A stretch of DNA of 63,201 nucleotides, the filler included, from Octopus bimaculoides (lineage: Eukaryota): NCBI RefSeq assembly GCF_001194135.2. It is 4 parts of 4 records of this genome, joined end to end, with 100 filler letters (N's around TTAATTAATTAA, not from the genome) between each part and the next. Parts side by side here need not be neighbours in the genome. Positions count along the whole stretch, not along the records: positions 35,359 to 52,008 come from NC_068999.1; 3 more parts are not named here. One strand, 5' to 3'. The notes beneath the pieces were generated by a model. That model was not told where the DNA came from. It ran no database searches and saw only the letters and a program-made list of their open reading frames with translations. Below, in pieces: positions 35,359 through 52,008 of this stretch. Position 1 is the first letter of the stretch. Each line of letters starts with the position of its first letter. The position numbers and the translations under genes are program-made.

Positions 35359-35960
35359 ACTTTAAATATATTTAATATTTCAGTTAAGAAGTCTTTTTCT
35401 TTGTCATTTATGTCTCTTATGGCAATAATTACATCATTGATATGATCAAAGAATGTGGAATACATCATTAGTGATAGATGTTTGTTGTTCATTTCCTTTA
35501 GTATGAAAGATTTCAAACTTTGCCTCAAGACTTTCAAAAACAATGTTGTTGTGTGAAGATCAATTGGTTTATTGAGAAAGTATTTGAAGCATTCTTCACA
35601 GGATCCTAACTTTAGACAAATACTGTTTGCATCCTTCTCAATCAGGTCTTGAAATAATTTCAAGTTTAAACAACATATTCTGTGTTTGGAACATTCATGA
35701 GTTCTTGTCCAAGGATCATTTTGAAAATCAAGTTCAAGACTTTTCCATTTTATTTTAGACTTTTTAGCTTTATATTTCTTTCCATCAGAAGACACTGATT
35801 TTGACTGTTGGTTTTTATCAGATTGTTCTGAATTATCTTTCTGAAATTTATTTTGATTCAATTTAACTCCGTCATATTTTGTGTCTGTTGCTAATTTCTT
35901 ATAAATCACATCTGGGGTTTTTTCCGGTAATGTTTTGGATTCTTTATTGTAGTTGTCCAT
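35359..35960 (-). CDS. first coding exon (N-terminus) of a probable second ZNFX1-like gene, truncated by spacer
   Basis: Acceptor ttatttcag| at 35966, ATG at 35960. A charged low-complexity N-terminus is followed by LNLKLFQDLIEKDANSICLKLGS...FKYFLN...LFLKVLRQSLKS...LSLMMYSTFF, which aligns by eye with the recalled human ZNFX1 N-terminal helical region (LGYKFLESLLQKDPSEVVITLATS...LICQVLRKACSS...LGILKNSKFL). Confidence 0.65.
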
Positions 35961-36009
35961 TATTCCTGAAATAACATAAATTATTATATGAGTAATAACA
36001 ATAATAAAA

Positions 36010-36950
36010 GTTTCTGATTTAGGCACAAGGCCAACAATTTTGAGAGGAGAGGATTAATGAATATCATTGACCCATTGGTACTCTATTTCCTTAACCCCAA
36101 AAAGATGAGTGACAATAACTCCTTGTAAAGACACAGAACCTGAAATTTGGAAGAAGGGGTTAGTTGATACTACAGATCCTAGTACTTGACTGATACCTTT
36201 AATTTATTGATCTAAAAGCACAAAAGACAAAGTTGACCTTAGCAGGATTTGGACCCAGAATGTAAAGAACCAAAACAAAAACTCAACATTGTAATGGACC
36301 TGCCAATCCACCACTCTTAATAACTGTTTCTAATCCTCTACCCTTAATAACTGTTTCTAACATAGGCACAAAGCCTGATATTTTCAAGAAGAGGATCAGT
36401 TAATATCCTCAACCCTAGTACATGACAAGTCCTTTATTTTATCAACCTTAAAACAATGAAAGGCACAGCTGAACTTGGTAGAATTTTAACTCAGAATGCT
36501 AAGAGCCAGAACAAATTCTGCAAGGAATTTTATCCAATGCTCTAATGGGTCTACCAATTCTGGCCTCAAATCTTTGGGCACAAAGTCTGAAATTCGATGG
36601 TGGGGGCTTAGTTAATTAAATGAACCTCAGTACTTGGCTGCTATTCATATTTCATCAACCTAAAAAAGGATGCAAGTTAAAATTGCCCTAGGCAAGATTT
36701 GAACATAAAGAGCTAGATGAAACAGCATAAGGTATTTCTTCCAACAGTAAAATGATTCTACCAATCCACTTCCCTTATAATTGCAATAATAACGAGCAGG
36801 TATGGCTTATTTTTAAGAAGTTCTCTTCACAACCATAGGGTTTCAGGTTCTTTTCTGCTATATTGCACTTTGGGCAAGTGTCTTCTACCACAACTGTGGA
36901 CTGACCAATGTCTTGCAAGTGATATTTGGTAAATGAAAACTACAAAATTT
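36010..36950. mobile_element. cluster of about five decayed SINE copies
   Basis: Repeated ggcacaaggcc/ggcacaaagcc starts near 36020, 36363 and 36576, with agttgaccttagcaggatttggacccagaatgtaaag-type bodies, followed by a tRNA-headed copy (ttgggcaagtgtcttctac) at ~36800-36950. Confidence 0.7.
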
Positions 36951-37799
36951 TGTGATATACATGTATATTTATAGTCTGAGTTAAAGATTCAGATGCATAC
37001 TTGAACCCCTTGACACACATACCAACCCCTAACAACTGGTACCTAAATCCCACTCTGTTGGCAATCCCTACTCAGTGTTTCTTTTGTTTTTCTTGAAAAG
37101 GGATATAACTCTTGATGGAATACCATCTATTGACTATCTTCCCCAGCTTCATTTCATCATTTTTTATGGCACCCACAAACCAAATATGACACTTACTCAC
37201 TTCCAATAACAGACTGCAATAGCTATTTTTTTCCATACCTGCCACTCTGATGAGTGTGGTTTAGATAATCTGATTATCTAATATTCTATGCAAAACCATT
37301 TGTTAAGATCAGTTAAATGGATCTATGATACTGTATTCTTTGTTTTATATATATATATATATATATACACATATAAACAGGGTTGGTAAGCTGACGGGTT
37401 GCACCAGATTCCAGTCTGATTTGGCAAGGTTTCTATAGCTGAATGCCCTTCCTAACGCCAACCAGATTGTAATGGGTGCTTTTACATATCACCAGCACAG
37501 GTGCCAGTTAAGTAACAGCTGTATCTGCCATGACTATGATTTCACTTGGTTTGTTGGATCTTCTCAAGCACAACATACTGCCAAAGATCTTGGTCATCTG
37601 TCATTACCTCTGTAAGGCCCAATGCTCAAAAGGCACTTTGTACGTGATACCACCATCAGCCACATTACCTCTGTGAGGCCCAACGCACAAATGGTGCTTT
37701 TTACATGCCACTGGTACAGGTGCCAGTTACATGACACCAACAATGGCCATAACCATGATTTCACTTGATTTGCCAAGGCCTCGGTCACTTAGTCATTGC

Positions 37800-38340
37800 C
37801 TCAGTGAGGCCCAACATTTGAAGATCATGTTTCACCACCTCGTCCCACGTCTTCCTGGGTCTCCCTCTTCCACAGCTTCCCTCCACTGTTAGAGATCAGC
37901 ACCTCTTCAAACAGCTGTCAACATTCATCTACATCACGAATATACTAACACAGTCATCTCCCTTGCACACCACATCTGATGCTTTTTATGCCCAACTTTT
38001 CTCCCAAGATGCTTACACTCTGTTGTATATGCACACTGACATTGCACTCCCAGCGAAGCATACTAGCTTCATTTCTTTCAAGCCTACACATGTCCTTGGC
38101 AGTCACAGATCATGTTTCACTACCGTGCAGCATAGCTGTTTGCACACAGGTATCATACAATCTGCCTTTCATTCTAAGGAAGAGACCCTTTGTTACCTAC
38201 AGAGGTAGGAGCTCTTTGAACTTTGTCCAGCCTATTCTTATTCTAGCAGCTATTCTCTCAGAACATCCACCTCCTCTACTGACTTGGTCACCTAGATAAT
38301 AAAAGCTATCAGCTACTTCTAGCTTCCACCCACCCACTGG
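37800..38340 (-). mobile_element. RTE-clade LINE 3' fragment
   Basis: Minus-strand GSCGRGRPRKTWDEVV, the classic RTE C-terminal motif, with upstream decayed RT-thumb sequence. Confidence 0.75.
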
Positions 38341-38689
38341 CATTTGATGGAGTCTATTTTCTGTATATTTTTAGTGTTTATTGTACCTCTTCACCTTCCA
38401 CACACAAAAACTAGTTTCCCTGTTAACCTTCCTCTGATATTTGCTGCACCTTTTATGTGTCCATAGCTAACAGTGGGTACATCTTATGCAGTTTCTACCT
38501 ATGCCTTTCCTACAGTTCAAGCAAGCCCATCTACCTGAAGGGATATGTGATTTGTCTACTTTCCTACTTACTAAGACTTTGGTTTTTGTTCCAGTCAAAC
38601 TGTCCGACCTATGGATGGTCTGTCTTCACATTGACACCACGGTTTGTCCAACATGGACAACAGATGTTAAATGATGATGATGATGATGC

Positions 38690-38820
38690 AGCTGTGTGGT
38701 AAGAAGCTTCTTTCCCAAGCACATGGTTCCGGGTTCAGTCACACTGTGTAGCACCTTGGACAAGTGTCTTCTACTATAGCCTCAGGTCAAGCAAAGCCTT
38801 GTGAGTGGATTTGGTAAACA
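38690..38820 (+). mobile_element. tRNA-derived SINE 5' part
   Basis: gctgtgtggtaagaagctt...ggttccgggttcagtcacactgtgtagcaccttggacaagtgtcttctactatagcc. Confidence 0.8.
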
Positions 38821-38939
38821 GTTCGAGTTAGCGTGTTGGATTGTTGGTTCTTAAAAGACTGTTGTTACGTTATGTGTGGTTACTGTCATTTGCTTTGATT
38901 CTATTGTTATTCTACTGTTGCAGTGTATTTGTTTATCCA

Positions 38940-39137
38940 TAAGTGCAATGAACCTCTGCAAGATGTGTGGGAAGAGGGTCAAAAGTGTGACTTACATTGT
39001 TAGTGCTTGTGAAAGTTTTGCACAGAAAGAGTACAAGCACAGACACAAGGTAGCCCAAAATCTTCACTGGCTGCTATGCCAGAAATATGGATATGAGGTA
39101 ATGGGTGCTTGGTACCAACATACACCGGAAAAGGTGT
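38940..39137 (+). mobile_element. REL-type non-LTR retrotransposon zinc-knuckle fragment
   Basis: CKMCGKRVKSVTYIVSACESFAQKEYKHRHKVAQNLHWLLCQKYG matches the CxxC..H(I)..C....Y..RH..VA..HW.LC pattern. Confidence 0.75.
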
Positions 39138-41179
39138 AGCTCTGATGAAAACAGGCTTTCCCTATCATATTTGTTCTCCTTATGCAACAACTTCGCACAG
39201 AAAGCAAGTGTAATTATATCCTTGTGAACAAAGATTTCTCCAAATTTTTAATTTATGTTAACTCTATTTTTGAGTTTTTAAGTTATTTATCTTGTTACCT
39301 GTTATCTGCTAATTATGTAATTGAGCTTTTACAAATAGAAATAAATTAACTCTTTAAATTTTTGCCCTATCAGTTCCAATCCACAAATATTAAATCATTT
39401 ATGTATAAATCTCATAATATATAATACAATATTGTTTCTTTCATATATGTAATGATTTGCTTCAGTGCAGTTGACTATAGAGTTGTATAGAAGTGATTCT
39501 ATTCTGATTTCAAGCCTATTATTCTACATTGGATTTATCTCAAGTCCTGAATTGCACATAAGAATTGATTTCAAGTCTAAGAGCAAATTACAAGAAACAC
39601 ACCTTCTAAGTAAATGTTATTCAGGCATCAGAAATTAATACATAGCAATTTACCATATTTATTCTGGTTTAATATGAACCCATATGTAATGTCCACCACA
39701 AATTTTGGGCTATGAAATCCAAGGTAAAAAATATCCCTGGTGTATGATATATACTGACCTTTCTAAGATGAAGTGTTTATTATAATTGCTGTCTCAAATA
39801 TATCAAGAAAATTCAAGCATACTAAACAAAACAGAAAACATATTGAAAAGTGTTTTATGAATTAAATTTTAACAATTAAAAGTGGCCTAGAAACTTAACT
39901 GGCAAAAATGTGGAATTACTGCCAGCAACTTTCAGCACAGGACAAGACGTAATGCAAAATGTAAAAAGTTTTATTATCAAATGCATTCATTTAGATACTT
40001 TCATTAAATCCATGAGACTTTGTTACAATGAAATAAACACTTATAAACTGATTTTAAATGAACTTTATTAAAAATTGTATTTATAAAATTCATGCAATGG
40101 CTTCATGAGTTAGTTATCACTACCAATTTGCTAGCCAATTTCTGTTCATGAATCACATTTACATGTGGAAATTTTGAGCAATACTATATTTACTTGTATT
40201 CATAGATAGCAGTAAGCTATCCATCAATAGTTGTGAGCTATCTATTAGCTTTTGTTCTCATAGTTATACAAGTAACAAATCTATTCCTACATAATTTACA
40301 TGCACTCATATATCTTTCTCAGACTTCCCACATTGAGATAGTTTAGCGCATCTTGTTTTAGCATTTTCTTGAAAGTTCTTTTTGCTTCCACAAATACCTT
40401 GATTATATGTTACACATAAAATACTCCTTCAACACTAATTTCCACACTCATAATCATATTCAATAATACACAACTCAGAAACAAAGCTCATAACTCATTT
40501 GCTTTCAAATGTTCATGGCTGCTTTTTTTACATCATCCTTCTCTATCAAAAATAGCATGAATTTTTTTAGCATTTCTGCCAACAAAACTGTGTATAAATA
40601 TGAAAGGTTAAGACAATTATGAGCAGTATATGTGCCACATCATAAAACACCTTTGCTCTTGAACCAAATTCGAATTTTCCATAAGCAGTTTTATTTGTTT
40701 CTGTACATGACAACAACTTTGTTTACAATGCCAATACTCATACAGACTGCATAGTGGCATATATTCAATCATTTGTATTTCAAACCTGGAGTAAGGTTCT
40801 GTAGCTAAGATGCCAGTAACTTTTTCTATTTTTTTTAGGTAACTTTATATGAATAAAACATTGTGACTTATCTATGAGTATATACAGTGTTATCATTTGT
40901 TAAAAATATATATATTAGCAACAGAGGCTAATATTACCGAGAGGTAATATTTGTCCCCACTTAAACATGGATATTCCATTAGAACTATGCTGTGCTAGTT
41001 ACCATGAAAGAAACTCTCATATTGGCTTTTGGTGCAAAATGCTAGTAGGGAGATAAATCCCTTCAGTACTGAGACCACCAAATCATGTAATTTCAACCTT
41101 CCTTAGTCTCATCGATAATGGACACGCAACCGCTAGAGATAGCAGCAACTCATCCACCCACAAGCGATATATAGAAAAA

Positions 41180-42140
41180 AGTCACTGGGGTCATGATTAG
41201 CCAGTGAGCTTGTTAAAAAAAAATTTATTTTTATTTTTTTAACATTCTCACTGGCTAATCAGTCCCTTCCTATTCATCATTAGTCCTCCAGGCCATAACA
41301 GAGGAGTACGAAACCAGTTACTACCCATGGAACTCCTTTATGCTGATGACCTTGTTAATATAGCTGAATCTTAGTAGAATTAAAAAAGAAGTTCCAAGTA
41401 TGGAAGTAAAACCTGAAATGAAAGGGCCTCAAAGTTAACTTAGCAAAAACGAAAGCTTTAGTAACTAAGAAAACAGACATATCTGTTTCCATCAGGGAAA
41501 TGGCCTTCTTCATTACATAGAAAAAGAAAAGCTTTGGCATGGCATACCCAATGCAAACCATGGACATACAAGAGATGCAGGGGTATCACAAGCAGGTTAA
41601 GAGAGAATGTAGAGTTCACATGCAGCAGATGCTCAGAAGTAATAAGCAATAAGACCTCATGGAAAATAGACTTTCTCAAGTGTCCTATCTATTTCCTAGG
41701 TGACTTAATTAGCAACAGAGAAGGATGTTCTGTAAGTATAGTTGCTAGAATAAGAACATGCTGGGAAAATGTTTTACAAATCTTTTATTACTGTGGGTAA
41801 TTAAAACTTTCTCTCTGAGAATGAAAGAGTATAAGTATGATGTTTGTGTACAAACAGTAATACTACATGGTAGTGAGAATTGGGCCCTGAATGCAAAGGA
41901 CTTCCAAAGATTAGAAAGAAATGAAGCTAATATGCTTCATTCAATTTGCAACATAAATGAGCATGATGACAAAGTACAAATGTGTTGATAGAAAAATTGG
42001 GCAGAAGAGGAATCAGGTGTAGTGTGAAAGAAAGATTGCACTGGTCTGGGCATATAATGCATATGGGTGAGGACAGCACTATACACAAGTGATGATGGGA
42101 TTTGTGGAAGAGGGAAACCCAAGAACACATGGGACAAAAT
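41180..42140 (+). mobile_element. RTE-clade LINE RT fragment (decayed)
   Basis: PWELLYADDLV, MKGLKVNLAKTKALV, YFLGDLIS, TVILHGSENWAL and GRGKPKNTWD motifs across broken frames. Confidence 0.85.
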
Positions 42141-42369
42141 AAACAAAAATAAACTCTGTTGGTATCTGTTCAACAATCACAATCTACTACCACTGCTACA
42201 TAAACTTCTTAGACACTTTGTCATGAATGGCTATGGGATTACACCTAGAAAGTTCACCTCCAAAGCACAAGTCCAAGAAAGGCTGTTTGTGGAAGACCAG
42301 CAGTCACCCATGCATACTAGTTTCCTCTCTCTATGCCACCAATGTTGTCTAAGGGAAAGGCAAACACCA

Positions 42370-42540
42370 GTAAGTTTGGCACCACTGACATCGCAGCTCA
42401 TTTCTACAGCTGAGTGAACTAGAGCAATGTGAAATAAAGTGTCTTGCTCAAGAACACAACACAGCCTGGTTCAGGAATTGAACTTACAACTTAACAATTA
42501 TAAGCCCAATGCTCTAACCACTGAGCTACGTGCCTTCACT
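42370..42540 (-). mobile_element. tRNA-derived SINE 5' part
   Basis: Reverse complement begins gtgaaggcacgtagctcagtggttagagcatt...gttcaattcctgaacc...gtgttcttgagcaagacac (A/B boxes followed by SINE core). Confidence 0.75.
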
Positions 42541-43999
42541 ACATTGACTTACACAGTTCCAGTAATAAATTCCAGTGACTGTGATGATCCCAGTTAATAA
42601 GTTGAAGGAATCATCAGCATCTCATCCAGAGCATAAGTTGCCACGTGTTGGAAATCCAGCTGTACATCAGCCCTGCAGGAGTGTACATATTACAAAGGAA
42701 ATATGCAAACCACAAAAAAAAAAAATTGAATTTATGAGACATCTAAATTTTAAATATGCTAAGTGTCATGTGCATGATTCTCTCTATTGATGAGGAGGAG
42801 CTACTGCAATGTTATAGTCGTCTATATTATTATCACTTTGAATTATTCTTTGTTTGTATTTCAATGTTCCATGCAGCACCTGTCAAGAAGACAATTCCTT
42901 CACTCAGCTGATCACATCTGCTTGCATCTGGATTTGGAATTTGTCATGGTGTGAGTTCTTTCTAGAGATTCCTGTACAAAATTGTATAATCTTAAAACTT
43001 AACACATAATGTAATATTTCCTCAGTCCACAAAAATTTGATAAAAATTATTTTTCAACTAATTTTTCCAGAACAATTCTTCACTAAGCATCTTTGCCTGT
43101 GTTTTTGAATAAACAATGCAAATTACATTTCTGATTATTTTTAATGCTGTCTAGCATTAAAAATAGCCCTACGTTTTATCTTATATGGTCATGTATGTAT
43201 GAAAATCCCAAATTTCTATCATGTTCTTCATATTTGCTTAATTTTTATTATTATTTTACATACATCTTTTACTTTCTCTTCATCAAATGCTAACATTGAG
43301 ATTGGAATGATTTCAGTACTTTCCAGCAATATCACTTTTCTCAGTAATGCCAAGCAACACTGATGCAACCAAAAAATGTTTGGGATTTTTTAGCCAGCAC
43401 TATAGCATACTTTTTCTTTCATTATCCAGGCAGCAACCTCAAAAGGTGGGACAGAGGACAGTTGTAACCACTCCACCCATTCAGTAACTATTTTGTTTTA
43501 CCATTTGTTCTCTGATGTCAGCTTTGGTTTTTCTCTCATATGCTTCTGCCTTATCCATGAATATTTTCTGCTTCCCTCTTCAAGTTGTGAATCACTGCTC
43601 TACTATTTTTCGTAAATCCAATGTCAGCCAGGTAGAACACTGTATCTAATTATAAATTCCCAACACCCCACTTCTATTGGAACTACTAAACATTATCATC
43701 CTTGTGACTAACACAATTCCCTAAGTACTTCCTATTTCAGGACTTTTTTGTCTGTGACATTCTGTACAACCCTACCAACTCAACAAGGATAAACATGTAT
43801 TAGTAATACTGTTAAATTGCTAATAACTTTTCTTCTCTTCACAGCGATAATTTAAATGGATTAAAAATTATATTCGGTTTATCAATCATATACTGTGAAA
43901 GGGGTGATTTGCACACTGTCAGAATATGTCCAAAGGATGTACAGCCTCCACACTGATGCCAGTGTAACTCAAGCAAATGATGGAAACAAAGTGCACGTT

Positions 44000-46100
44000 G
44001 CCACCATCAGAAATCAGTTGGCTTTATTTTACACGTTCCAGGCGACTTTCCTTGTTCAGCAGTCTTTCACATACATTGGCTTTCCAAGCAACTGTTTTAG
44101 TCTCACATTCCACCTCTTCAAGACGACGAATATTTTTTGGTCACAGTATTTCGCTTGGTTTTCTTATTCTACTGCATTGCAGCAAAGGATATCCTATCCT
44201 TTACCATACGATATTCTACTGCGTTGCCGCAAAGGATTCCCATCTAGTTTCATTTTGTTTTTGTTGCTGATCTTCGAGACAATTTTCTTTATTCCAACGC
44301 TACTATAACAAATTACTATCTTCCGTTTACATTTTAAGTCTTTTATATTGTTATTGATGTAACTTACCATTTCATATTATCTTCAAAGTTATTGGAAGTT
44401 TAACTACAACTACTATTAAGTAGTAGTAACAAAAGGGAACTTTACTTTCTGGCGATTTACTAGGGAAGTGAAATAACTCAATAAGTTCTTTTTTAATTAC
44501 AATTTGTTTTTGTTTTTTTGCGTAAAAAAAGGGGACATAACTAAATGCACCAAAATATGTTAGGTTTGGCTCCAACAAAATCCCATGAAAATTAGCGGCT
44601 TTGATGCTAGTGGACAACCAGTGAAGATAACTTTGATAGGTTTCGTCAAGTATAGGCCCAGACCATGTCTAACTTAATAGCACCACATGAAAGTAATATT
44701 TTTCATCGAAAATATAACCACGGTGAGTGGCACCCTGCCCATTGGGTATTCGGAGGAATATTTGTCTGTTAAATTTATATATATTTTTTTTTTATATTTT
44801 TATGTGACGAGTTAATCACACGAAATATTATATATGGTAATTGTTCAGTTGGTGGAAGTAAAGAATACGTAGACCCGGTGTTTTGGGTTAGGAGTCTTGT
44901 TACGCCGAAAACGGGTGGTGTAGGTATTCTTTACCTCCGCAAATTTATTTTACTACGTTTGACGAAATCGTCGAACTTCTACGTTCTCTTTGTGAAACAT
45001 AAATGAAATCAAAATAAATCTTTGCAGAAATATACGCGACGTTTAAATTTAACCATTTTTTTTCACTCATTCATTTTGTATTTGAGCGTAGACTTTCAAT
45101 CCCTGGTCCCAGAGTTTCTGAACCAACTTCTCACATGTGGATCCACCGAAATTCACTTATTTGGATCGTTTAAAAGATTTACTTTTCACAATTTTTGGTC
45201 ACCAATAGTTAATGTTGATGTTATATACATTTCTATTTTCAAAATTCTAAAATGCGTTTCGTTTGTTAGTTTCCTATTTTAACTCATAAAAACTCCATGC
45301 AACTTACGCAAGAATTACATTCAGAGATCAAAACAATTAATTGGTCACGTAACGCAAATTGCAAAGAATTTCCGTGACTTCAGTGGCCAAATGAAACGTC
45401 TACTTACCATATTATTTAGGTGATATCTGTTTATGTGTTTCTATTGTTTTCAGATATTCTGACAGTAATCTCCAATGGCATAGGCTGCCGTTTTACCTCT
45501 AAAAATACATTTTAAGAAGTACAAGGCCGCACACTGACGGAATTACTACGGTGTACAGCGTTAGATTAGTTTTCAAGAATTCCAAGTCGTCTCCCTTATT
45601 TCAAGAGTGGAATTAGATTCAGTCATTAATTACAAATTCCAGCAACTCAAGATTGTTATTGTTTTTTTAGTTTTATAGGGTAGGGAATTAACAGAACTGT
45701 TTGAGCATTCATATTCCGAGTTCAAATTAGGTCCTCTATCCCTTTTTTTTTTTAAATATATTTATTGAGTTACTTCCCTTCATTTATAATACCTGTTAAT
45801 TACGTTGGACAATTTTTTTTAGATATCAGTTGCATGCGATGTTTTTATTGCTTCTTTCAAATTTGTAATCGGTTTTGCTCACCATGCTCTAGTTTTCTTG
45901 CAATTCGAAAATGAACTTTTTATATTTTGTTGTGTCTGGGGAGAGTCATTTTCTTTTTGTACCATATAATTTAATACACTCACCGGTAAAATTTCCACTT
46001 ATTTCTTATTTTTATTTTCCTAAAATTTTCGTTGCGTCTTGCAACCTTTTCAATAGTGTTGACTCTCTCCGTTATTTACACTGCATTCCTTTCTGTTTGT
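44000..46100 (-). promoter_or_regulatory. CpG-retaining region; candidate promoter/5' exons of the downstream ZNFX1-like gene
   Basis: CpG dinucleotides are visibly frequent here but scarce in the flanks of this segment; minus-strand donor-like sites at 44367 (ATG|gtaagt), ~44934 (gag|gtaaag) and 45407 (ATG|gtaagt). Confidence 0.4.
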
Positions 46101-46182
46101 TTGTGCGCATGTGTGTGGGTTAGTGTGTGTATGTGCCTATGCATGTCTATGTATGTGTGTATGTATGCATGTGTGTGTATGT

Positions 46183-47425
46183 TGGTCACTCAGTCCATTT
46201 ACAACAAGAATACAATGACATAAAAATGGTTATTGGCCAACTAAAATGCCATGAGCACAACTGGACCATTTGTGTAGATTTGAAAATGGTCAATTTCCGC
46301 CTCAGCCAACTGAAAGGTTTCACAAAGTATCCTTGCTATCTCTGCATGTGGGACAGCTGACCTCAAGAGTAACACTGGATTCAGAAGTGGCCCATTTGTG
46401 AGACTCTGGAGGTAGGCATGCCTAATATTGTGAATGATTTAATTGTCAGCTGAGGAAAGATTATTTTCCAACCACTCTATATAAAGCTGAGCTTGATAAA
46501 GCAATTCACTAAGGCATTGAATATTGATGGTGAATGTTTTCCACATATAGTCTCTGCATTTCCTGGGTTATCATTTGAAAAGATCAAAGCAAGTGTGTTT
46601 AACAGAGCTCAGATTCATGCGCTTCTACAGGGTAAGGAGTTTGTAGGAAAAATGAATGACAAGGAAAAAGCAGCATGGCTGTCATTCGTAGCAGTCATAA
46701 AAAATTTTCATGGAAACAGAAAAGCAGACGACTATGAAATTCTTGTAAATAGTATGCATAGTCACCTCAATCAATTCCTTGAAAACCTTGGAGATGTAAG
46801 TGATGAACAAGGTGAGTGCTTCCACCAAGACCACAGGACCATGGAAGAGTGTTATCAAGGGTGATGGAACAAAAACGTGATAGCAGACTACTGCCTGAGC
46901 ATTAAACAACATTTCCCTGAGAATGTCTACAAATGCAAGAGCTCCAAGCATAAATTCTTGTCTGGATAAGATCTATTTGTGTTTTATCTTATATCTTAAT
47001 CAGTTTCTCAACTATGTACACCTATCATTTGTACATAATATATATTTTCAACTGAAAAGCAGATGGCAAAAAAATGGCATATAACATTTATTTTACTCAG
47101 CATCAGAATAAGAAATATTATTTTTATAGCCTAATTCTTATTGTGGTGTAGAAACTCGTACATATGAATAAAGTTAAAATCTCAATGCATAGATATTTGT
47201 TCTTTTCCACTTAGTTTGAAGATAGTATAACTAGAAAGTTATCAGATGGATTATATCATATCTCAGGAAATATTCAAAATTTGGAAAATATATTTTTAAA
47301 AAACCTTAGTTGCAAGAAATCTAGAGCTTACAGAGAAAAACTAACTTCATATTTGAATTCTGCATACTCAAATTAAATAATACCAATTGTTGATATCAAT
47401 GCAACAAAAATTTTATTTGCCAGTG
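46183..47425 (+). mobile_element. Chapaev(3)-like DNA transposon, 3' half with decayed transposase
   Basis: HNWTICVDLKMVNF...GFTKYPCYLCMWDS...PPLYIKLSLIKQFTKAL...EKAAWLSFVAVIKNFHGN...HSHLNQFLENLGDVSDEQGECFHQD...YQG; ends in tttatttgccagtg (rc CACTGGCAAATAAA), a CAC-starting TIR. Superfamily name from recall. Confidence 0.7.
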
Positions 47426-48749
47426 TTGTTTTTACTTAACCAATTATATTTATATAAAACACTAGAGTAGCCATGCCATCATGCTAAACATGGATGGAAC
47501 CTGCAGAAAATGGAGACCTTGAATGAAGTAGTGAAGATCAAATTCAAAATATTGAGCTTGAGAGAGGAGATGAGAAAGTACCAAAAAGAGTGGTGATATG
47601 CTGTGCTAGATATAACCTGTCCATCTCAGCAAAAATGAGATCCTGTCAAATCTAACAGCAGTACAAAGCACTTAGTTTCTGTAAAGGATGCTATCATCCC
47701 CTGACACTTCACATTATTACCGTTATTTTCCCTTATTATCTTCTCCCCTCTTTGACCCACTCATATTTCCTTCCCTTCTTCACCAAACTGGATATTCAAT
47801 GTCCACATCAATCCTCAAGTGTAACCATATCACACTTCAGTGCACTTACCTATGCACTCACCCTCTCTGTTCCTCTATCTCTATTTTCCCTCTCATGTTT
47901 ACTTTGTCAAATGCTTAGAATGAAAAATATTGAGGAATTAAAGAAACAAGCCAGTAATAATGATAATTTTCTTCTTTATTTTAACTGAATATACAAGCAA
48001 ATTTTGTAGGAAAGGAAGTATAGAGGATTCCAGTGTAAAAAATGTACTTATGTAAATGTAACTGTTAAACTACATCTAACACCATGTTTCCTTTTTTTTA
48101 AACGCAAATCTATAAAAAAAATACATGGAAATTATATATATATGCTATTTTAAAAAAAGGAATATAACAAAATATTTCCAAAGTTATTAAGCAAATAGCC
48201 AAGAAAAATGCATTATCTGCTTATTATGCTCATCAATTATTCTTACTTTTAAAAATTTCTTAAACAAGCAAAAAAAGGCTTTTATATTTTTGACACAAAA
48301 TAACCAATTCTTACATTNNNNNNNNNNNNNNNNNNNNNNNNNNNNNNNNNNNNTATATATATAGTTCATAGGCTTAAGAGTGGTTCAGTAAAGAATTTTA
48401 TAGCACTTTCATGGTTTCTTTATTCTAAAAAATTATCTTTCGCTTTATTTTCACAACCAAAGTGCAACTGGATTTGGTTAGTTAAAGTGTTCATAGATAT
48501 TTTGTATTGAAATTAGAGTAACGGTTAGTTTTGGTTTAACAAGTTTATATGCATATTTTCAGTTAGGTTTGAACTGTGGTTAAGTTATTACAGGTAAAAC
48601 AATACAAAGAGAAAGCAGCGTGGTCAATTGCTCAAATATATTGTTATGAAAGAAATAATAATTAAAAGAATGTTTAGATTTGCTTACAACTTGAATAGAT
48701 AACAATTTCATTTTTCAAACATATAGAACACTGTATATTTCAATAAACT

Positions 48750-48780
48750 TTTATTAGATCTTGTAGAAATAGTATTTATT
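48750..48780 (-). terminator. candidate polyadenylation signals (AATAAA x2) of ZNFX1
   Basis: tttatt at 48750-48755 and 48775-48780, just downstream of the stop codon at 48794. Confidence 0.4.
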
Positions 48781-48793
48781 GAACAAAATCTTT

Positions 48794-48975
48794 TTACTGA
48801 ATCAAATTCAAATTAGCAGCATCAGACCAAGCAGCGTACTCTGCACCATCCATTTCGTTAGCCAATGTATTACTTGCTAATAACTGATGAGACGTTCCTC
48901 CTATCTCGCATTTACACTCAGGACAAGTGCTTGTCACTACAGCACCTCCACAGTCTCCGATAGCATAAATATGAC
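48794..48975 (-). CDS. ZNFX1: ZNFX1 last exon (C-terminal half of RZ-type zinc finger)
   Basis: Acceptor ttgtttcag| at 48976, phase-compatible with the previous exon; joined sequence KGHWFKCKNG|HIYAIGDCGGAVVTSTCPECKCEIGGTSHQLLASNTLANEMDGAEYAAWSDAAN closely matches the ZNFX1 C-terminus; TAA ends at 48794. Confidence 0.93.
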
Positions 48976-50121
48976 CTGAAACAAAACTATTAATGTTAAT
49001 AGAAGCATAAGAGGAAGTTTCTTTAGTGAAAATTGTAAAGATATGAAATGATTTTAATAATTGTAAAAGAAACACTAAGTTTGCTGATATTCTGAAATTT
49101 TTTTTTCTTCTTCTTTATTTGACAGGAATAGCAGCCAAATCTCCCTCATATATCACCCCACTGCCTTGAAAAAAAAAAGTGGTGTCAGTGGATAATGAAG
49201 GGATGCTCATGATGGAGAGCATCTAATTTGGTTTGCTAGATCAAGGCTATCCTAGGGATAAACAACAATAAGAATATTCAGCATAAAAATGTCGGAATGT
49301 TGACCAGTTAGCTAATTTGAAGGACAAGGCTTGGGGAGGTGTTATTGTTCAGCAAGACAATGATTTTCAAAATAACAAATGCCATTCACCATCTCAAATA
49401 TTAATGTAATTTTTGCTCAACCCTATTAATGAAATGAAAAAATAGTTTGTATTCATGTGATTCTTTTTTAGTTTTTGAGCTTTTGGAAATACTAAAACAT
49501 TTAAAACCTAATTTTATTACACATTTGAAATTTCACAGCTTCCATCCCACCATAAGATGACTGCAGAACATTATGTGTTGCCTTAATTAAGCAGTAATCA
49601 AGCAATTCATTGGACATAGAAGAGATTACTATTGATAAAGTGGTGGGTTTGGAATTGAGAGATGAAGGATATTTGAAATGGTAGAGTAAGTGTGTTAAGA
49701 ATACATATAGATGTGGTTTCAAACTGGTTGAGAATAAGAAGCTATTTCGGCTCTTTTCAAACAGCTATGATGTCATGGGAGTGCAAAAACCAAGACTTTA
49801 TATCAACTACGACAATGATTTCAAATGAGAGAACTACATATATGGTTGCTCAACTTGTTAGATACAGTTACCAAATTTCTCCTTATTTCCTTAAAAAAGA
49901 GAAAGACACATTGGATAATGTAGTCTCGTTATTAGATGTTGTGGGCATTGTATGGATTCCGACAGGGGTACATGAATAGGAAATCACAAGGACATCACAC
50001 TATTGAAAGTGTCAGAATGTGTTATATCAAAAATAATAGAAGTAATGATAAACTCCATGAGATTTTACTATCGTAACTAAACTGAATTATTTGCAAACAA
50101 GTTATTTTAACATTTACTTAC

Positions 50122-52008
50122 CATTTTTACATTTAAACCAATGTCCTTTAGGAAGTTGCAAAGCTTGAACAATTTCAAATCTTTCCTTCTCAGAAATCTT
50201 CAAACTGGGCTTTAAAGTTTCTATTTTATTCAGGATTGTTTCAATTTTTGATTGCTTTTCTTCTGAATAAAATCCTTCCAAATAAGTGGATGCTTCTTTT
50301 AACAAACTAGAAATATCAGACATGCCTTGTGTATCAGTCTTCAAATTTTCTATGTTCTCAAGTACTTGAAGATGTTGCACTTCTAAACTTGCTTCCTTCA
50401 GCTCTTGAGCAGTAAATCTAGCTTTATGATCTACAAACCATTCAACCAAATATTGAATATTTATTGTACTCAGTTTAGACAAAACTTCTAAATACTGAGC
50501 CTTAGTTTTCATAGAGATAAAATGCTCCTTACTTATTATGCTCCCAATATGGAAATGTTTTTCTAACTTTCTTAAATGTCTAATATTATTTGGATTTGAA
50601 TTTATATAAGATTTTAATGTAAAAACTTCTATAGGATCAGCATTCAGTTTTTCTTTTACTTTTTCAATGTCTTGTAAGGTCTTATTGATAAGATTTCCAT
50701 ATCTATGATTACGCCTGATTGGAGTTTTACACTTTGGGCACAATTTTAGTTGAATTTCAGAATTATTCAAATCAACTTCCATCCAATTATCCAAGCCAGT
50801 TACTTCAAAAATGTGTTTGCAATCTTCAAGTTGAACAAAACGAGCACCATTTTCATCTTCATTGCCAAAAAATATTTCTTTAAGCTCATCTTCATTACAA
50901 ATTGAGCACAATTCAGGGCACTGTTCTCCACAAACACCAACACACTGGTGACTACAGTCAAGTAATTTTTCGCAAGGTGCATTACATGCTGGACGATCAC
51001 AGGGTTCGTGACATAACTTACTGCATTTGTAATGCATACACTCCCACTGACAAGGCTCATTGCACTGCTTACAAGGTTCACCACATTTCTTTTTACATTT
51101 ATTGTGTAGACATCGGTTTTCACAAGGCCTTTCACAAGGTGTACAAGAAGAACAATCTTTATTTTGACATTTGTGACCACAGATTAAAATTCTGTCGCAT
51201 CCTTCCATACATGGCTTGTGAATATGAATTCCATGACACTCAAAACAGTATCCCTTACAAAAATGGCCACAGTCGAGAAGTTCTTTACAAATTGCAAAAC
51301 ATTTTTCCTTTTGATAGCACTCTATATTTGAAGTATGACCGTAAGGACAAGTGTTTTCAACGATTTGATGACATTCACTCAAACAATTTTCTCCACATTT
51401 ATTTAAACATTTATGACCACAAGGAAATTCTAATGGACATGGCTCCTGGCAAATAAATGTGACAGGATCTTTGGAACAAAACATTTCCTGATGGTGAGAG
51501 CAATTTGGTATTACTTTTGTAACATTCATTATGCACGGCATACAACGTTCAGAGCAGCTTCTTAAACATGGATGATTACAAACAGGGAGAGTTTTGACAC
51601 ATTGTTTTTTACAGATATAATCAGTATGTTCCTTATCATAAGGATGACACATTAATGCACAAGTGTGTCCACAATCTAGACGTGCTTCACATGGTTTTAA
51701 ACATCCACCTTCTGGTGCCTTACAAAAGTCTTCAAAAGATGCCACTTGAGCATGTGTTTCAGGATGATTCTGACATTTCAATATCATTGCATCAACAAGT
51801 ATTTTCTTCTCCTCTAATGATAACAAAATTTCTGCCCATAGTGGACTGTTTGTAGCAAGAAGCTTAAAATTTCCAATGACATATAAGCCTTTCTTTGCTC
51901 TTGATAATGCAACACATACTCTGTTATCAATTTTTAGATATCCAATTGAATTATGCTCATTACTTCTGACTAAAGACAATAAAATTATGTCATTTTCTTC
52001 TCCTTGAT
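50122..52008 (-). CDS. ZNFX1: ZNFX1 penultimate exon: end of SF1 (UPF1-like) helicase, NF-X1-type zinc fingers, helical region, start of RZ finger
   Basis: Open frame from the spacer: QGEENDIILLSLVRSNEHNSIGYLKIDNRVCVALSRAKKGLYVIGN (helicase C-terminal motifs), CQNHP, GGCLKPC, many CGHxC repeats, CPKCKTPIRRNHRYGNLI, then KGHWFKCKNG; donor G|gtaagt at 50121. Confidence 0.95.

What the first reader, a model, noticed from the sequence alone, without database searches (positions are those of the whole stretch)
35359..52008. Probable head-to-tail tandem ZNFX1 paralogues (antiviral/RNA-surveillance helicase-E3 cluster)
Seen: one segment carries a complete ZNFX1 3' end (52008 to stop at 48794) and, ~13 kb downstream on the same strand, a ZNFX1-like N-terminal exon (35960 to 35359); that order is impossible for a single gene. 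Established: ZNFX1 is an RNA-binding SF1 helicase with NF-X1 fingers and an RZ finger, linked to antiviral innate immunity and, in C. elegans, heritable RNAi; it is single-copy in human. Inference: a local ZNFX1 expansion with a divergent second copy, notable in an animal rich in edited dsRNA and inverted repeats. This is the best candidate for an under-described system here.
Basis: partly seen in the sequence, partly recalled or inferred. Interest (0 to 1): 0.75.

Follow-up and report, generated by a model that had tools for sequence, protein, structure and literature searches.

The report
Two neighbouring octopus ZNFX1 genes
This stretch of Octopus bimaculoides chromosome holds the tail end of one full-length ZNFX1 antiviral helicase/ubiquitin-ligase gene and, 12.8 kb further on, the start of a second ZNFX1-type gene whose relatives in other octopods are a shortened, helicase-only form; this is a modest extension of a known invertebrate gene-family expansion.

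Summary
On the minus strand, 52006-50122 plus 48975-48794 encode the end of the helicase, the NFX1 zinc-finger stalk, a Miz-like region and the RZ finger of ZNFX1 (human ZNFX1 E 1.4e-55). Bases 35960-35359 encode a ZNFX1 N-terminus, a disordered region followed by the armadillo domain. It is 94% identical to the start of an O. vulgaris/O. sinensis ZNFX1-like protein, and the best fold match is the human ZNFX1 ARM domain.

The 36-N gap lies 441 nt after the stop codon, beyond two AATAAA signals, and interrupts no reading frame. The piece's upper edge is a 2,643-N assembly gap. Before that gap sits a second, diverged copy of the N-terminal exon (copy A). The gap is almost exactly the size of the missing helicase core (2,639 nt in O. 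sinensis).

Best reading (0.7): these are two head-to-tail genes. The upstream one is long: exon A, a core hidden in the gap, then the 3' end seen here. The downstream one (exon B) is orthologous to an intronless, 1,178-1,226-aa ARM+helicase-only paralogue with conserved synteny in Octopus and Argonauta. The two genes appear to be homogenised by gene conversion, which would explain the assembly gaps. Scaffold mis-joining is not excluded. ZNFX1 multiplicity in invertebrates is already known, so interest is moderate.

The parts
50122..52006 (-). Gene A (long ZNFX1, = XP_014781926.1): the 3' part of a giant coding exon, cut at 52008 by a 2,643-N assembly gap. It encodes 628 codons plus 1 nt.
   Evidence: The frame is open from the piece edge. 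PDB 9q9z_A human ZNFX1 matches at E 1.4e-55. All 120 homologues begin aligning exactly at the contig start. The edge coincides with the gap.
51776..52006 (-). End of SF1 helicase lobe 2 including motif VI (QGEENDIILLSLVRSN...RVCVALSRAK), aa 1-77 of the visible product.
   Evidence: Alignments to human ZNFX1 residues 1275 onwards and to UPF1 residues 539-611.
50921..51775 (-). NFX1-type zinc-finger stalk, aa 78-362 (aa 1-380 hold 58 Cys and 21 His).
   Evidence: Aligned to human ZNFX1 up to residue 1451. The conserved Cys/His columns are kept; two apparent misses are one-residue shifts.
50672..50920 (-). Miz/SP-RING-like region, aa 363-445 (C-x3-C-x2-C ... C-x-H ... C-x2-C).
   Evidence: C363, C367, C370, C396, H398, C423 and C426 are conserved in at least 93% of 31 homologues. 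The Miz name is taken by position from Naydenova et al. (bioRxiv 10.1101/2025.10.14.682297). It was not aligned to the human domain here.
50156..50671 (-). Helical linker between the Miz-like region and the RZ finger, aa 446-617.
   Evidence: Translation. Low conservation. The helical character is inferred from composition and was not modelled.
48976..50121 (-). Intron, phase 1, GTAAGT ... TTTCAG (1,146 nt), splitting the RZ finger after ...GHWFKCKN.
   Evidence: Sequence. The joined exons are in frame and restore the RZ motif. Homologues align across the junction.
48794..48975 (-). Last coding exon of gene A: the rest of the RZ finger (the finger spans 50155-50122 plus 48975-48884), the C-terminal tail, and stop TAA at 48796-48794.
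   Evidence: RNF213 RZ finger matches at E 1.4e-4. Pfam PF20173 hits the identical protein. Homologue identity is 47-68%.
48750..48780 (-). Two AATAAA polyadenylation signals, 14 and 39 nt after the stop.
   Evidence: Read directly from the sequence. Their use is inferred.
48318..48353 (.). 36-N assembly gap in the 3' flank of gene A, abutted by (TA)n. It is not in any coding frame.
35968..48317 (.). Spacer between the two genes (the 36-N gap, listed separately, adjoins it). It holds repeat debris and no intact gene. The part from 42224 to 35968 is collinear (88-94% identity) with the upstream flank of the O. sinensis/O. vulgaris short gene.
   Evidence: ORF list, repeats, synteny. No ZNFX1-like coding sequence was found.
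35359..35967 (-). Gene B (short-type ZNFX1 paralogue, = XP_014781925.1): splice acceptor AG 35967-35966, ATG 35960-35958, then 200 codons open to the piece edge. This is the 5' part of what is a single 3.7-kb exon in O. sinensis, O. vulgaris and A. hians.
35685..35960 (-). Disordered Lys/Ser/Gln-rich N-terminal region of gene B (aa 1-92). It carries the KSKIKWK motif shared with the Argonauta short gene.
   Evidence: pLDDT below 50. 68.8% nt identity to copy A, with four in-frame indels. Motif comparison.
35361..35684 (-). First seven helices of the armadillo (ARM) domain of gene B (aa 93-200).
   Evidence: pLDDT above 90. Foldseek top hit 9eve_A, ARM domain of human ZNFX1. 99.4% nt identity to copy A at L001 17219-17514 onward.

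Best explanation
The piece spans the boundary between two neighbouring, same-strand genes of the ZNFX1 family in Octopus bimaculoides.

Gene A is a full-length ZNFX1. Its own N-terminal exon (copy A) lies just outside the piece. About 2.6 kb coding for the rest of the ARM domain and the SF1 helicase core is hidden in a 2,643-N assembly gap. The piece shows only its last 688 codons: helicase motif VI, the rigid NFX1 zinc-finger stalk, a Miz-like region and the RZ finger, which are the parts that make human ZNFX1 an E3 ubiquitin ligase.

Gene B starts 12.8 kb after gene A's stop codon, and the piece shows only its first 200 codons (disordered region plus ARM helices). By flank synteny and by its N-terminal motif, gene B is the orthologue of an old octopod paralogue. 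In O. sinensis, O. vulgaris and Argonauta hians that paralogue is one intronless exon encoding ARM plus helicase only, and it ends a few codons into the first NFX1 finger.

Over the part they share (from mid-ARM to the truncation point) the two genes are kept almost identical within a species by gene conversion. That is also why short-read assembly broke after both N-terminal exons.

Inferred mechanism. Gene A works like vertebrate ZNFX1, an RNA-binding SF1 helicase coupled to ubiquitin ligation. Gene B would give an RNA-binding helicase without ligase modules. It could act alone, or could pair with gene A's protein through the ARM domain, which is the dimer interface in human ZNFX1.

Shown here: identities, domain content, exon structure, synteny, mosaic identity. 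Inferred: the content of the gaps, physical adjacency, gene conversion, and any function.
For: ZNFX1 identity of both ends:
-.

A second N-terminal exon (copy A):
- It lies at L001 16940-17523, immediately before the 2,643-N gap that ends at window 52008.
- In O. sinensis the distance between the homologous points is 2,639 nt of uninterrupted ORF.
- No helicase-core coding sequence occurs anywhere in the 36.8 kb of assembled sequence.
- No core-bearing O. bimaculoides protein is in the database.
- Copy A's ORF runs on past ...NIFK as ...VIL(T), matching O. vulgaris ...NIFKIILT, so there is no intron at that point.

Copy A and copy B are distinct old paralogues:
- Codons 1-93 are 68.8% identical in nucleotides (dS 0.62), and all four indels are multiples of 3.
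- Copy B against O. sinensis over the same codons is 95.6% identical (dS 0.09).

Mosaic identity (conversion):
- Codons 94-202 are 99.4% identical between A and B, with 2 synonymous differences. That is closer than B is to O. sinensis (98.2%).
- The first 127 aa of the visible gene A product are 96% identical to the O. sinensis/O. vulgaris short gene.
- The Argonauta long and short genes are 92% identical to each other there, but only 72-78% identical to the Octopus sequences.

Orthology of gene B to the short gene:
- Window 42224 to 35361 is collinear with the 10 kb upstream flank plus the start of the O. sinensis and O. vulgaris genes.
- The KSKIKWK motif is shared with the Argonauta short gene.

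The short form is real and old:
- It is a single intact ORF of 1,226 codons (Octopus) or 1,178 codons (Argonauta).
- No NFX1 or RZ coding sequence lies within 10 kb downstream.
- The convergent downstream neighbour is conserved between the genera.

The junction between gene A and the spacer:
- It is a 36-N gap beside a (TA)n run, in sequence that is not part of the shared gene body.
Against: - The O. bimaculoides assembly is built from short reads, and nothing here checks contig order independently.
- Both N-terminal exon contigs end within 9 nt of the same homologous position, and their last 335 nt are almost identical. Read pairs could therefore have been assigned to the wrong copy, and the near-identity itself could partly be a gap-closing artefact.
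- With the N-run counted as written, ATG(A) to the QGEEND codon is 3,229 nt, which is not a multiple of 3. Continuity of gene A across the gap therefore rests on size agreement only.
- In Argonauta hians the long and short genes lie on different large scaffolds, so adjacency is not a conserved feature.
- The Octopus and Argonauta short genes do not stop at exactly the same codon (about 14 codons apart, with an internal deletion in Argonauta). Independent truncations are therefore possible, and O. bimaculoides gene B might not be short.
- What follows 35359 is unseen.
- There are no expression data.
Confidence: 0.7

Rival explanations
1. There is one gene and the scaffold is mis-ordered. Exon B, a helicase core lying in a gap, and the contig 48354-52008 form a single full-length ZNFX1. 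The 3.66-kb contig was placed on the wrong side of the 12.96-kb contig. Copy A belongs to some other paralogue or is a partial duplicate.
For: - The O. vulgaris/O. sinensis protein starts with a B-type N-terminus (94% identity) and runs into sequence 96-97% identical to the start of the 3' contig.
- The ends of the exon A and exon B contigs are 99% identical, so a scaffolder could confuse them.
- The old annotation gave exon B no 3' partner.
Against: - The 36-N join between the 3' UTR and the spacer lies in sequence outside the shared gene body.
- The gap after copy A is sized 2,643 N against 2,639 nt expected.
- The orthologues of gene B in three species end before the NFX1 stalk and have a conserved convergent neighbour. 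A full C-terminus on gene B would therefore need a separate loss in each lineage.
- Copy A's contig stops inside the shared region, so copy A also continues into a ZNFX1 body.
Confidence: 0.12
2. The scaffold is chimeric. The long and short genes are both real but are not neighbours in the genome. Contigs from two unlinked loci were interleaved because they share a near-identical 3-kb body.
For: - In Argonauta hians the long and short paralogues sit on different scaffolds of 18.4 and 35.7 Mb.
- The shared body would generate ambiguous mate-pair links.
Against: - The only join that matters (48318-48353) is between unique-looking 3' UTR and spacer sequence and is estimated at just 36 nt.
- 99.4% identity between the copies is more easily maintained by conversion between close neighbours (inference).
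Confidence: 0.12
3. Exon B is a dead remnant in O. bimaculoides: an orphan 5' fragment of a duplicated gene, not part of a working gene.
For: - Only 200 codons are visible.
- RefSeq models it as a 206-aa 'uncharacterized protein'.
- No O. bimaculoides protein carrying its continuation is in the database.
Against: - The ORF is intact, with a conserved acceptor and ATG.
- Against O. sinensis, dN/dS is about 0.2-0.4, though from few sites.
- The orthologue is an intact ORF of 1,178-1,226 codons in three species.
- The frame is still open at the contig end.
Confidence: 0.05

Closest known systems
[quoted passage not shown]
   Same: Gene A's visible part aligns to human residues 1275-1451 (E 1.4e-55) and then continues with a Miz-like Cys/His pattern and an RZ finger. 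Exon B folds like the human ARM domain. Through the O. vulgaris orthologue, the ARM plus helicase region aligns to human residues 165-1406 (E 2.6e-229).
   Different: The human gene is single-copy. Here there are at least two family members side by side. Much of the octopus coding sequence is in one giant exon. The N-terminal disordered region is unrelated in sequence.
O. sinensis XP_036367004.1 / O. vulgaris CAI9736495.1 / Argonauta hians 1,178-aa 'ZNFX1-like' proteins
   Same: These are orthologues of gene B. They share 94% identity over the 200 visible codons, a collinear upstream flank, and the same N-terminal motif.
   Different: They are complete in their assemblies and show the short architecture: ARM plus SF1 helicase, with a stop a few codons into the first NFX1 finger. 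In O. bimaculoides everything after codon 200 is unassembled, so the short architecture is inferred there.
C. elegans ZNFX-1
   Same: It is a ZNFX1-family helicase that naturally lacks one of the E3 modules, the RZ finger (Naydenova et al., bioRxiv 10.1101/2025.10.14.682297). This shows the family tolerates loss of C-terminal modules.
   Different: According to that paper it keeps the zinc-finger stalk and the Miz domain. The octopod short paralogue lacks all three and coexists with a full-length copy.
Multi-copy ZNFX1 families in other lophotrochozoans (Aplysia 3 genes, PMC9334734; earthworm Eisenia 11 copies, PMC7253469)
   Same: Lineage-specific duplication of ZNFX1 in invertebrates.
   Different: Those reports count genes. 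In the passages read here they do not describe a helicase-only paralogue or sequence homogenisation between copies.
RNF213 RZ finger
   Same: The last exon junction encodes an RZ finger that matches RNF213 residues 4537-4578 (E 1.4e-4).
   Different: Only the finger is shared. The rest of RNF213 (dynein-like AAA core, RING) is unrelated.

Membership tests
ZNFX1 (gene A, 3' end in the piece) | SF1/UPF1-like helicase core (motifs I-VI) | tested here: inconclusive
   Only the motif VI region is assembled (UPF1 E 5.6e-12, ZNFX1 E 1.4e-55). Motifs I-V would lie in the 2,643-N gap. No core sequence occurs elsewhere in the 36.8 kb.
ZNFX1 (gene A) | NFX1-type zinc-finger stalk following the helicase | tested here: met
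   Aligned to human residues 1275-1451. The conserved Cys/His columns are kept.
ZNFX1 (gene A) | RZ-type zinc finger at the C-terminus | tested here: met
   Pfam PF20173 hits the identical protein. RNF213 RZ finger matches at E 1.4e-4. The motif GHWFKCKNGHIYAIGDCGG...CPEC is restored by the splice.
ZNFX1 (gene A) | Miz/SP-RING-like second E3 domain | tested here: inconclusive
   A conserved C-x2-C...C-x-H...C-x2-C pattern is present at aa 367-426. There is no alignment to the human domain, because the solved chain ends at residue 1451.
ZNFX1 (gene A) | N-terminal ARM domain on the same gene | tested here: inconclusive
   Copy A encodes an ARM start that is 99.4% identical to exon B's. Its link to the 3' end runs through an assembly gap. 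The size fits (2,643 against 2,639), but the frame cannot be checked.
ZNFX1 (gene B, 5' end in the piece) | N-terminal ARM domain of ZNFX1 type | tested here: met
   AF2 gives seven helices with pLDDT above 90. Foldseek's top hit is the human ZNFX1 ARM domain. phmmer against Argonauta and Haliotis ZNFX1 N-termini gives E 2e-41 to 1e-5.
ZNFX1 (gene B) | SF1 helicase core | not testable with these tools
   It lies beyond the piece edge in O. bimaculoides. It is present in the orthologues (Pfam AAA_11 and AAA_12; human ZNFX1 E 2.6e-229).
ZNFX1 (gene B) | NFX1 stalk and RZ finger | tested here: not met
   Tested on the orthologues only. Their ORFs stop 12-14 codons after the equivalent of aa 127, and no NFX1 or RZ coding sequence lies within 10 kb downstream on either strand in O. 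sinensis, O. vulgaris or A. hians. Gene B is therefore filed as a ZNFX1-derived helicase-only paralogue, not as a full ZNFX1.
Tandem paralogues under gene conversion | Same-strand physical adjacency | tested here: inconclusive
   Adjacent in the scaffold across a 36-N gap. No independent assembly covers the junction. In A. hians the two are unlinked.
Tandem paralogues under gene conversion | Mosaic identity: old divergence outside a tract, and near-identity inside it that exceeds the identity between orthologues | tested here: met
   68.8% against 99.4% on either side of codon 93. B against O. sinensis is 95.6% and 98.2% over the same two parts. The same within-species pattern is seen in Argonauta. 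Caveat: the O. bimaculoides tract lies at contig ends.

The most novel reading that the evidence does not exclude
Octopods keep a two-gene ZNFX1 module. One gene is a full-length helicase-E3. The other is an old helicase-only paralogue that lacks the zinc-finger stalk, Miz and RZ modules. Ongoing gene conversion keeps the ARM domain (the dimer interface of human ZNFX1) and the helicase of the two proteins matched. The short protein could then co-assemble with the long one and tune or cap its polymerisation and ubiquitin signalling, as a built-in regulator of an RNA-sensing pathway.
Probability: 0.12. Interest if true: 0.6.

Novelty: new variant of a known kind. Interest (0 to 1): 0.38.

Why it matters
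ZNFX1 couples RNA sensing by a helicase to ubiquitin ligation and is essential for human antiviral immunity. How its modules cooperate is an active question.

A natural pair of a complete ZNFX1 and a conserved helicase-only paralogue, homogenised over the ARM and helicase parts, would be a ready-made comparison of ZNFX1 with and without its E3 half. It would also add a clear example of concerted evolution in an invertebrate immune gene family.

In practical terms, the result shows that both RefSeq models at this locus (XP_014781926.1 and XP_014781925.1) are artefacts of assembly gaps. It also shows that ZNFX1 gene counts taken from the O. bimaculoides assembly will be wrong.

Tried and rejected
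- The word-index protein search with exon B returned only the 206-aa RefSeq fragment. It missed both XP_014781926.1 and the O. vulgaris protein, which the exhaustive search later found. Its negative result was discarded.
- Direct phmmer of exon B against PDB sequences gave no ZNFX1 hit at E up to 10. The link to human ZNFX1 needed the O. vulgaris orthologue as a bridge and the fold comparison.
- P0001 is not on record in the contig index. As a result, neither the sequence beyond 35359 nor the region more than 10 kb upstream of the O. sinensis/O. vulgaris short gene could be read.
- I first read the 'NIFK|GTAATT' end of the exon as a splice donor. I rejected this because the ORF continues in copy A and in all orthologues.
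- I first computed that ATG(A) to the 3' exon was in frame through the N-run. That used an ATG position off by one. The corrected distance is 3,229 nt, which is out of frame, so only the size agreement is used.
- The RefSeq model P0002 was rejected as evidence for a core-less ZNFX1. Its VLRQ-to-REEND junction uses a cryptic acceptor 6 nt inside the contig to bridge the gap.
- A shared ancestral truncation codon for the short genes was not confirmed. The Octopus and Argonauta short genes end about 14 codons apart.
- A PDB search of the 123-aa spacer ORF found nothing.
- The bacterial promoter/terminator scan at the gap is irrelevant to an animal genome and returned nothing.

Full report
**What the piece is.**

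The piece 35359-52008 is Octopus bimaculoides chromosome CM046619.1 (GCA_001194135.2). The record position is 25,600,032 plus the window position. Its upper edge at 52008 is the first base after a 2,643-N assembly gap. The reading frames that run off both edges are therefore cut by the assembly and not by biology.

**The gap, tested first.**

The 36-N run at 48318-48353 lies 441-476 nt downstream of the ZNFX1 stop codon (TAA, 48796-48794, minus strand). It comes after two AATAAA signals (48780-48775 and 48755-48750) and next to a (TA)n run. No ZNFX1 frame crosses it, so the in-frame question does not arise. The gap matters only as the join between the 3.66-kb contig carrying the 3' end and the 12.96-kb contig carrying the spacer and the N-terminal exon. 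Its truth cannot be proven from this sequence.

**The 3' end.**

- On the minus strand an open frame runs from 52006 to a GTAAGT donor after 50122.
- A 1,146-nt intron ends in TTTCAG at 48976.
- The last exon is 48975-48794.
- The joined 688-aa product matches human ZNFX1 (9q9z_A, E 1.4e-55, residues 1275-1451), UPF1-type motif VI (E 5.6e-12) and the RNF213 RZ finger (E 1.4e-4).
- It is identical to XP_014781926.1, and about 1,100 ZNFX1 homologues match it at E below 1e-20.
- It agrees with 157 of 167 columns that are at least 93% conserved in 31 homologues. The two 'missing' cysteines are one-residue shifts.
- Using the domain map of Naydenova et al. (bioRxiv 10.1101/2025.10.14.682297), the visible part covers the helicase lobe-2 tail, the NFX1 stalk, a Miz-like Cys/His pattern, a helical linker and the RZ finger. 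This looks like a working C-terminus.

**The N-terminal exon.**

- Exon B has an acceptor at 35967-35966, an ATG at 35960, and 200 open codons up to the edge.
- The quick word-index search found only the 206-aa RefSeq fragment XP_014781925.1. A direct PDB sequence search found nothing.
- The exhaustive search of 1.84 billion representatives found four proteins, all ZNFX1 family:
  - the fragment itself;
  - a 1,226-aa O. vulgaris/O. sinensis 'ZNFX1-like' protein (94% identity over all 200 residues);
  - the O. bimaculoides ZNFX1 model;
  - a 1,735-aa full-length ZNFX1 (E 3.1e-6).
- The O. vulgaris protein aligns to human ZNFX1 from residue 165 to 1406 (E 2.6e-229). This places exon B at about human residues 165-335.
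- An AlphaFold model built on 15 N-terminal sequences gives a disordered first 92 residues and seven confident helices.
- The best PDB fold match is the crystal structure of the human ZNFX1 ARM domain, by a hundred-fold margin in E-value.
The ATG lies 12,834 nt after the stop on the same strand.

**What lies just outside the piece.**

- The fetched locus L001 shows a second copy of the N-terminal exon (copy A, L001 16940-17523). It ends at the 2,643-N gap that precedes window 52008.
- RefSeq's 949-aa model joins copy A to motif VI through a cryptic acceptor, skipping the whole helicase core. This is an annotation artefact of the gap.
- In O. sinensis and O. vulgaris the homologous gene is one uninterrupted exon. 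The stretch between the points where the two O. bimaculoides contigs end is 2,639 nt, against the 2,643 N written in the assembly.
- No helicase-core coding sequence exists anywhere in the 36.8 kb I could read.
- No O. bimaculoides protein with that core is in the protein database.
- The simplest reading is that copy A, a core hidden in the gap, and the visible 3' end make one full-length gene.

**Two genes, not one.**

- Copies A and B differ strongly in their first 93 codons: 68.8% nucleotide identity, dS about 0.62, and four indels that are all multiples of three.
- Copy B differs from O. sinensis by only 4.4% over those codons. The A/B split is therefore much older than the split between the species.
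- Exon B plus 6.9 kb of upstream flank is collinear with the flank and start of the O. sinensis/O. vulgaris gene.
- That gene, and its counterpart in Argonauta hians, is an intact single-exon ORF of 1,226 or 1,178 codons. It stops a few codons into the first NFX1 finger.
- No stalk or RZ coding sequence lies in the next 10 kb, and a convergent neighbour is conserved between the genera.
- The Argonauta short gene also carries the B-type KSKIKWK motif in its disordered region.
- Gene B is therefore most likely the O. bimaculoides orthologue of an old helicase-only ZNFX1 paralogue. The full C-terminus in the piece most likely belongs to the other gene.

**Concerted evolution.**

- From codon 94 onward, copies A and B are 99.4% identical (two synonymous differences). 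That is closer than B is to its O. sinensis orthologue (98.2%).
- The first 127 residues of the visible long-gene product are 96% identical to the O. sinensis/O. vulgaris short protein.
- In Argonauta the long and short paralogues are 92% identical there, while comparisons between the genera give 72-78%.
- This pattern, with paralogues grouping by species inside the shared body and by gene outside it, is what gene conversion produces.
- It also explains why a short-read assembler stopped within 9 nt of the same position after both N-terminal exons.
- Caveat: the O. bimaculoides tract lies at contig ends, where gap-closing can copy the wrong paralogue.

**What remains open.**

- Physical adjacency rests on one 36-N join.
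- In Argonauta the two genes are on different scaffolds.
- The Octopus and Argonauta short genes end about 14 codons apart, so independent truncations are possible.
- I could not read beyond 35359, nor more than 10 kb upstream of the short gene in the long-read Octopus assemblies.
- My weights are 0.7 for the two-neighbouring-genes reading, 0.12 for a mis-ordered single gene, 0.12 for a chimeric scaffold, and 0.05 for a dead exon.

**Comparison with what is known.**

ZNFX1 is single-copy in humans but multi-copy in several lophotrochozoans: three genes in Aplysia (PMC9334734) and eleven in an earthworm (PMC7253469). A survey of metazoan ZNFX1 exists (Blasi et al. 2022, cited in those papers), but it is not held in the library and I could not read it. 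A local duplication is therefore ordinary. What I did not find described is a conserved helicase-only paralogue kept homogenised with the full-length gene. A full-text search for ZNFX1 with 'octopus' returned two papers, of which one was listed and read, and it does not address this. C. elegans ZNFX-1 shows that the family tolerates loss of the RZ finger.

**Verdict.**

It is a new variant of a known kind, of moderate interest.

Noticed in passing
L001 10001-23381 (O. bimaculoides; overlaps window 48794-52008): RefSeq XP_014781926.1 (949 aa) bridges the 2,643-N gap with a cryptic splice and so lacks the entire helicase core. Its first 124 aa come from two upstream exons. One of these has an inverted, diverged copy nearby and no counterpart upstream of the O. 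sinensis/O. vulgaris gene, so it is probably repeat-derived. XP_014781925.1 (206 aa) is gene B cut at the contig end.
   Followed up: partly
window 38029-38301 and 41690-41964: An inverted pair of retroelement-tail-like fragments, 70-75% complementary and 3.4-3.7 kb apart. Further diverged copies occur in the O. sinensis locus. Only short ORF pieces remain: each copy is split into 2-3 pieces, and there is no domain-length frame. The classification is from motif recognition and was not tested.
   Followed up: partly
window 46127-46864 (+): Two overlapping-frame ORF pieces (77 and 123 aa) that look like a remnant of a transposon-derived protein, with at least one frame break. There is no PDB sequence match. 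TG/TA-rich tandem repeats lie just upstream (46094-46182).
   Followed up: partly
window 48354-48372: A (TA)n run directly abuts the 36-N gap on the ZNFX1 side. An unresolved microsatellite is the likely cause of the gap.
   Followed up: no
L004 13873-14472 (Argonauta hians): The last ~200 codons of the short ZNFX1 gene are repeated in tandem just after its stop codon (70% identity to the O. vulgaris protein).
   Followed up: no
L002 8027-8653 (O. sinensis): A 208-aa PIF1-domain ORF (possibly Helitron-derived) sits 1.3 kb upstream of the short ZNFX1 gene. It is absent from the homologous O. bimaculoides and O. vulgaris flanks.
   Followed up: no
L002 19879-23681, L003 18779-23681, L004 16090-23537: A convergent multi-exon gene of about 1,670-1,730 aa, with no Pfam hit on record, is the conserved downstream neighbour of the short ZNFX1 gene in Octopus and Argonauta. 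Its identity was not determined.
   Followed up: partly
L005 10001-13915 (Argonauta hians, second scaffold): The long-type Argonauta paralogue is annotated as partial. Its homology to the O. bimaculoides C-terminus stops after aa 292, in mid-stalk, and nothing further is found in the next 10 kb. There may be an intron, or the gene may be interrupted.
   Followed up: no
L002/L003 13650-13660: In the Octopus short genes a consensus GTAAGT lies inside the last few codons, just where homology to the long form ends. The short mRNA may use it as a donor to an unknown downstream exon instead of reading through to the annotated stop.
   Followed up: no
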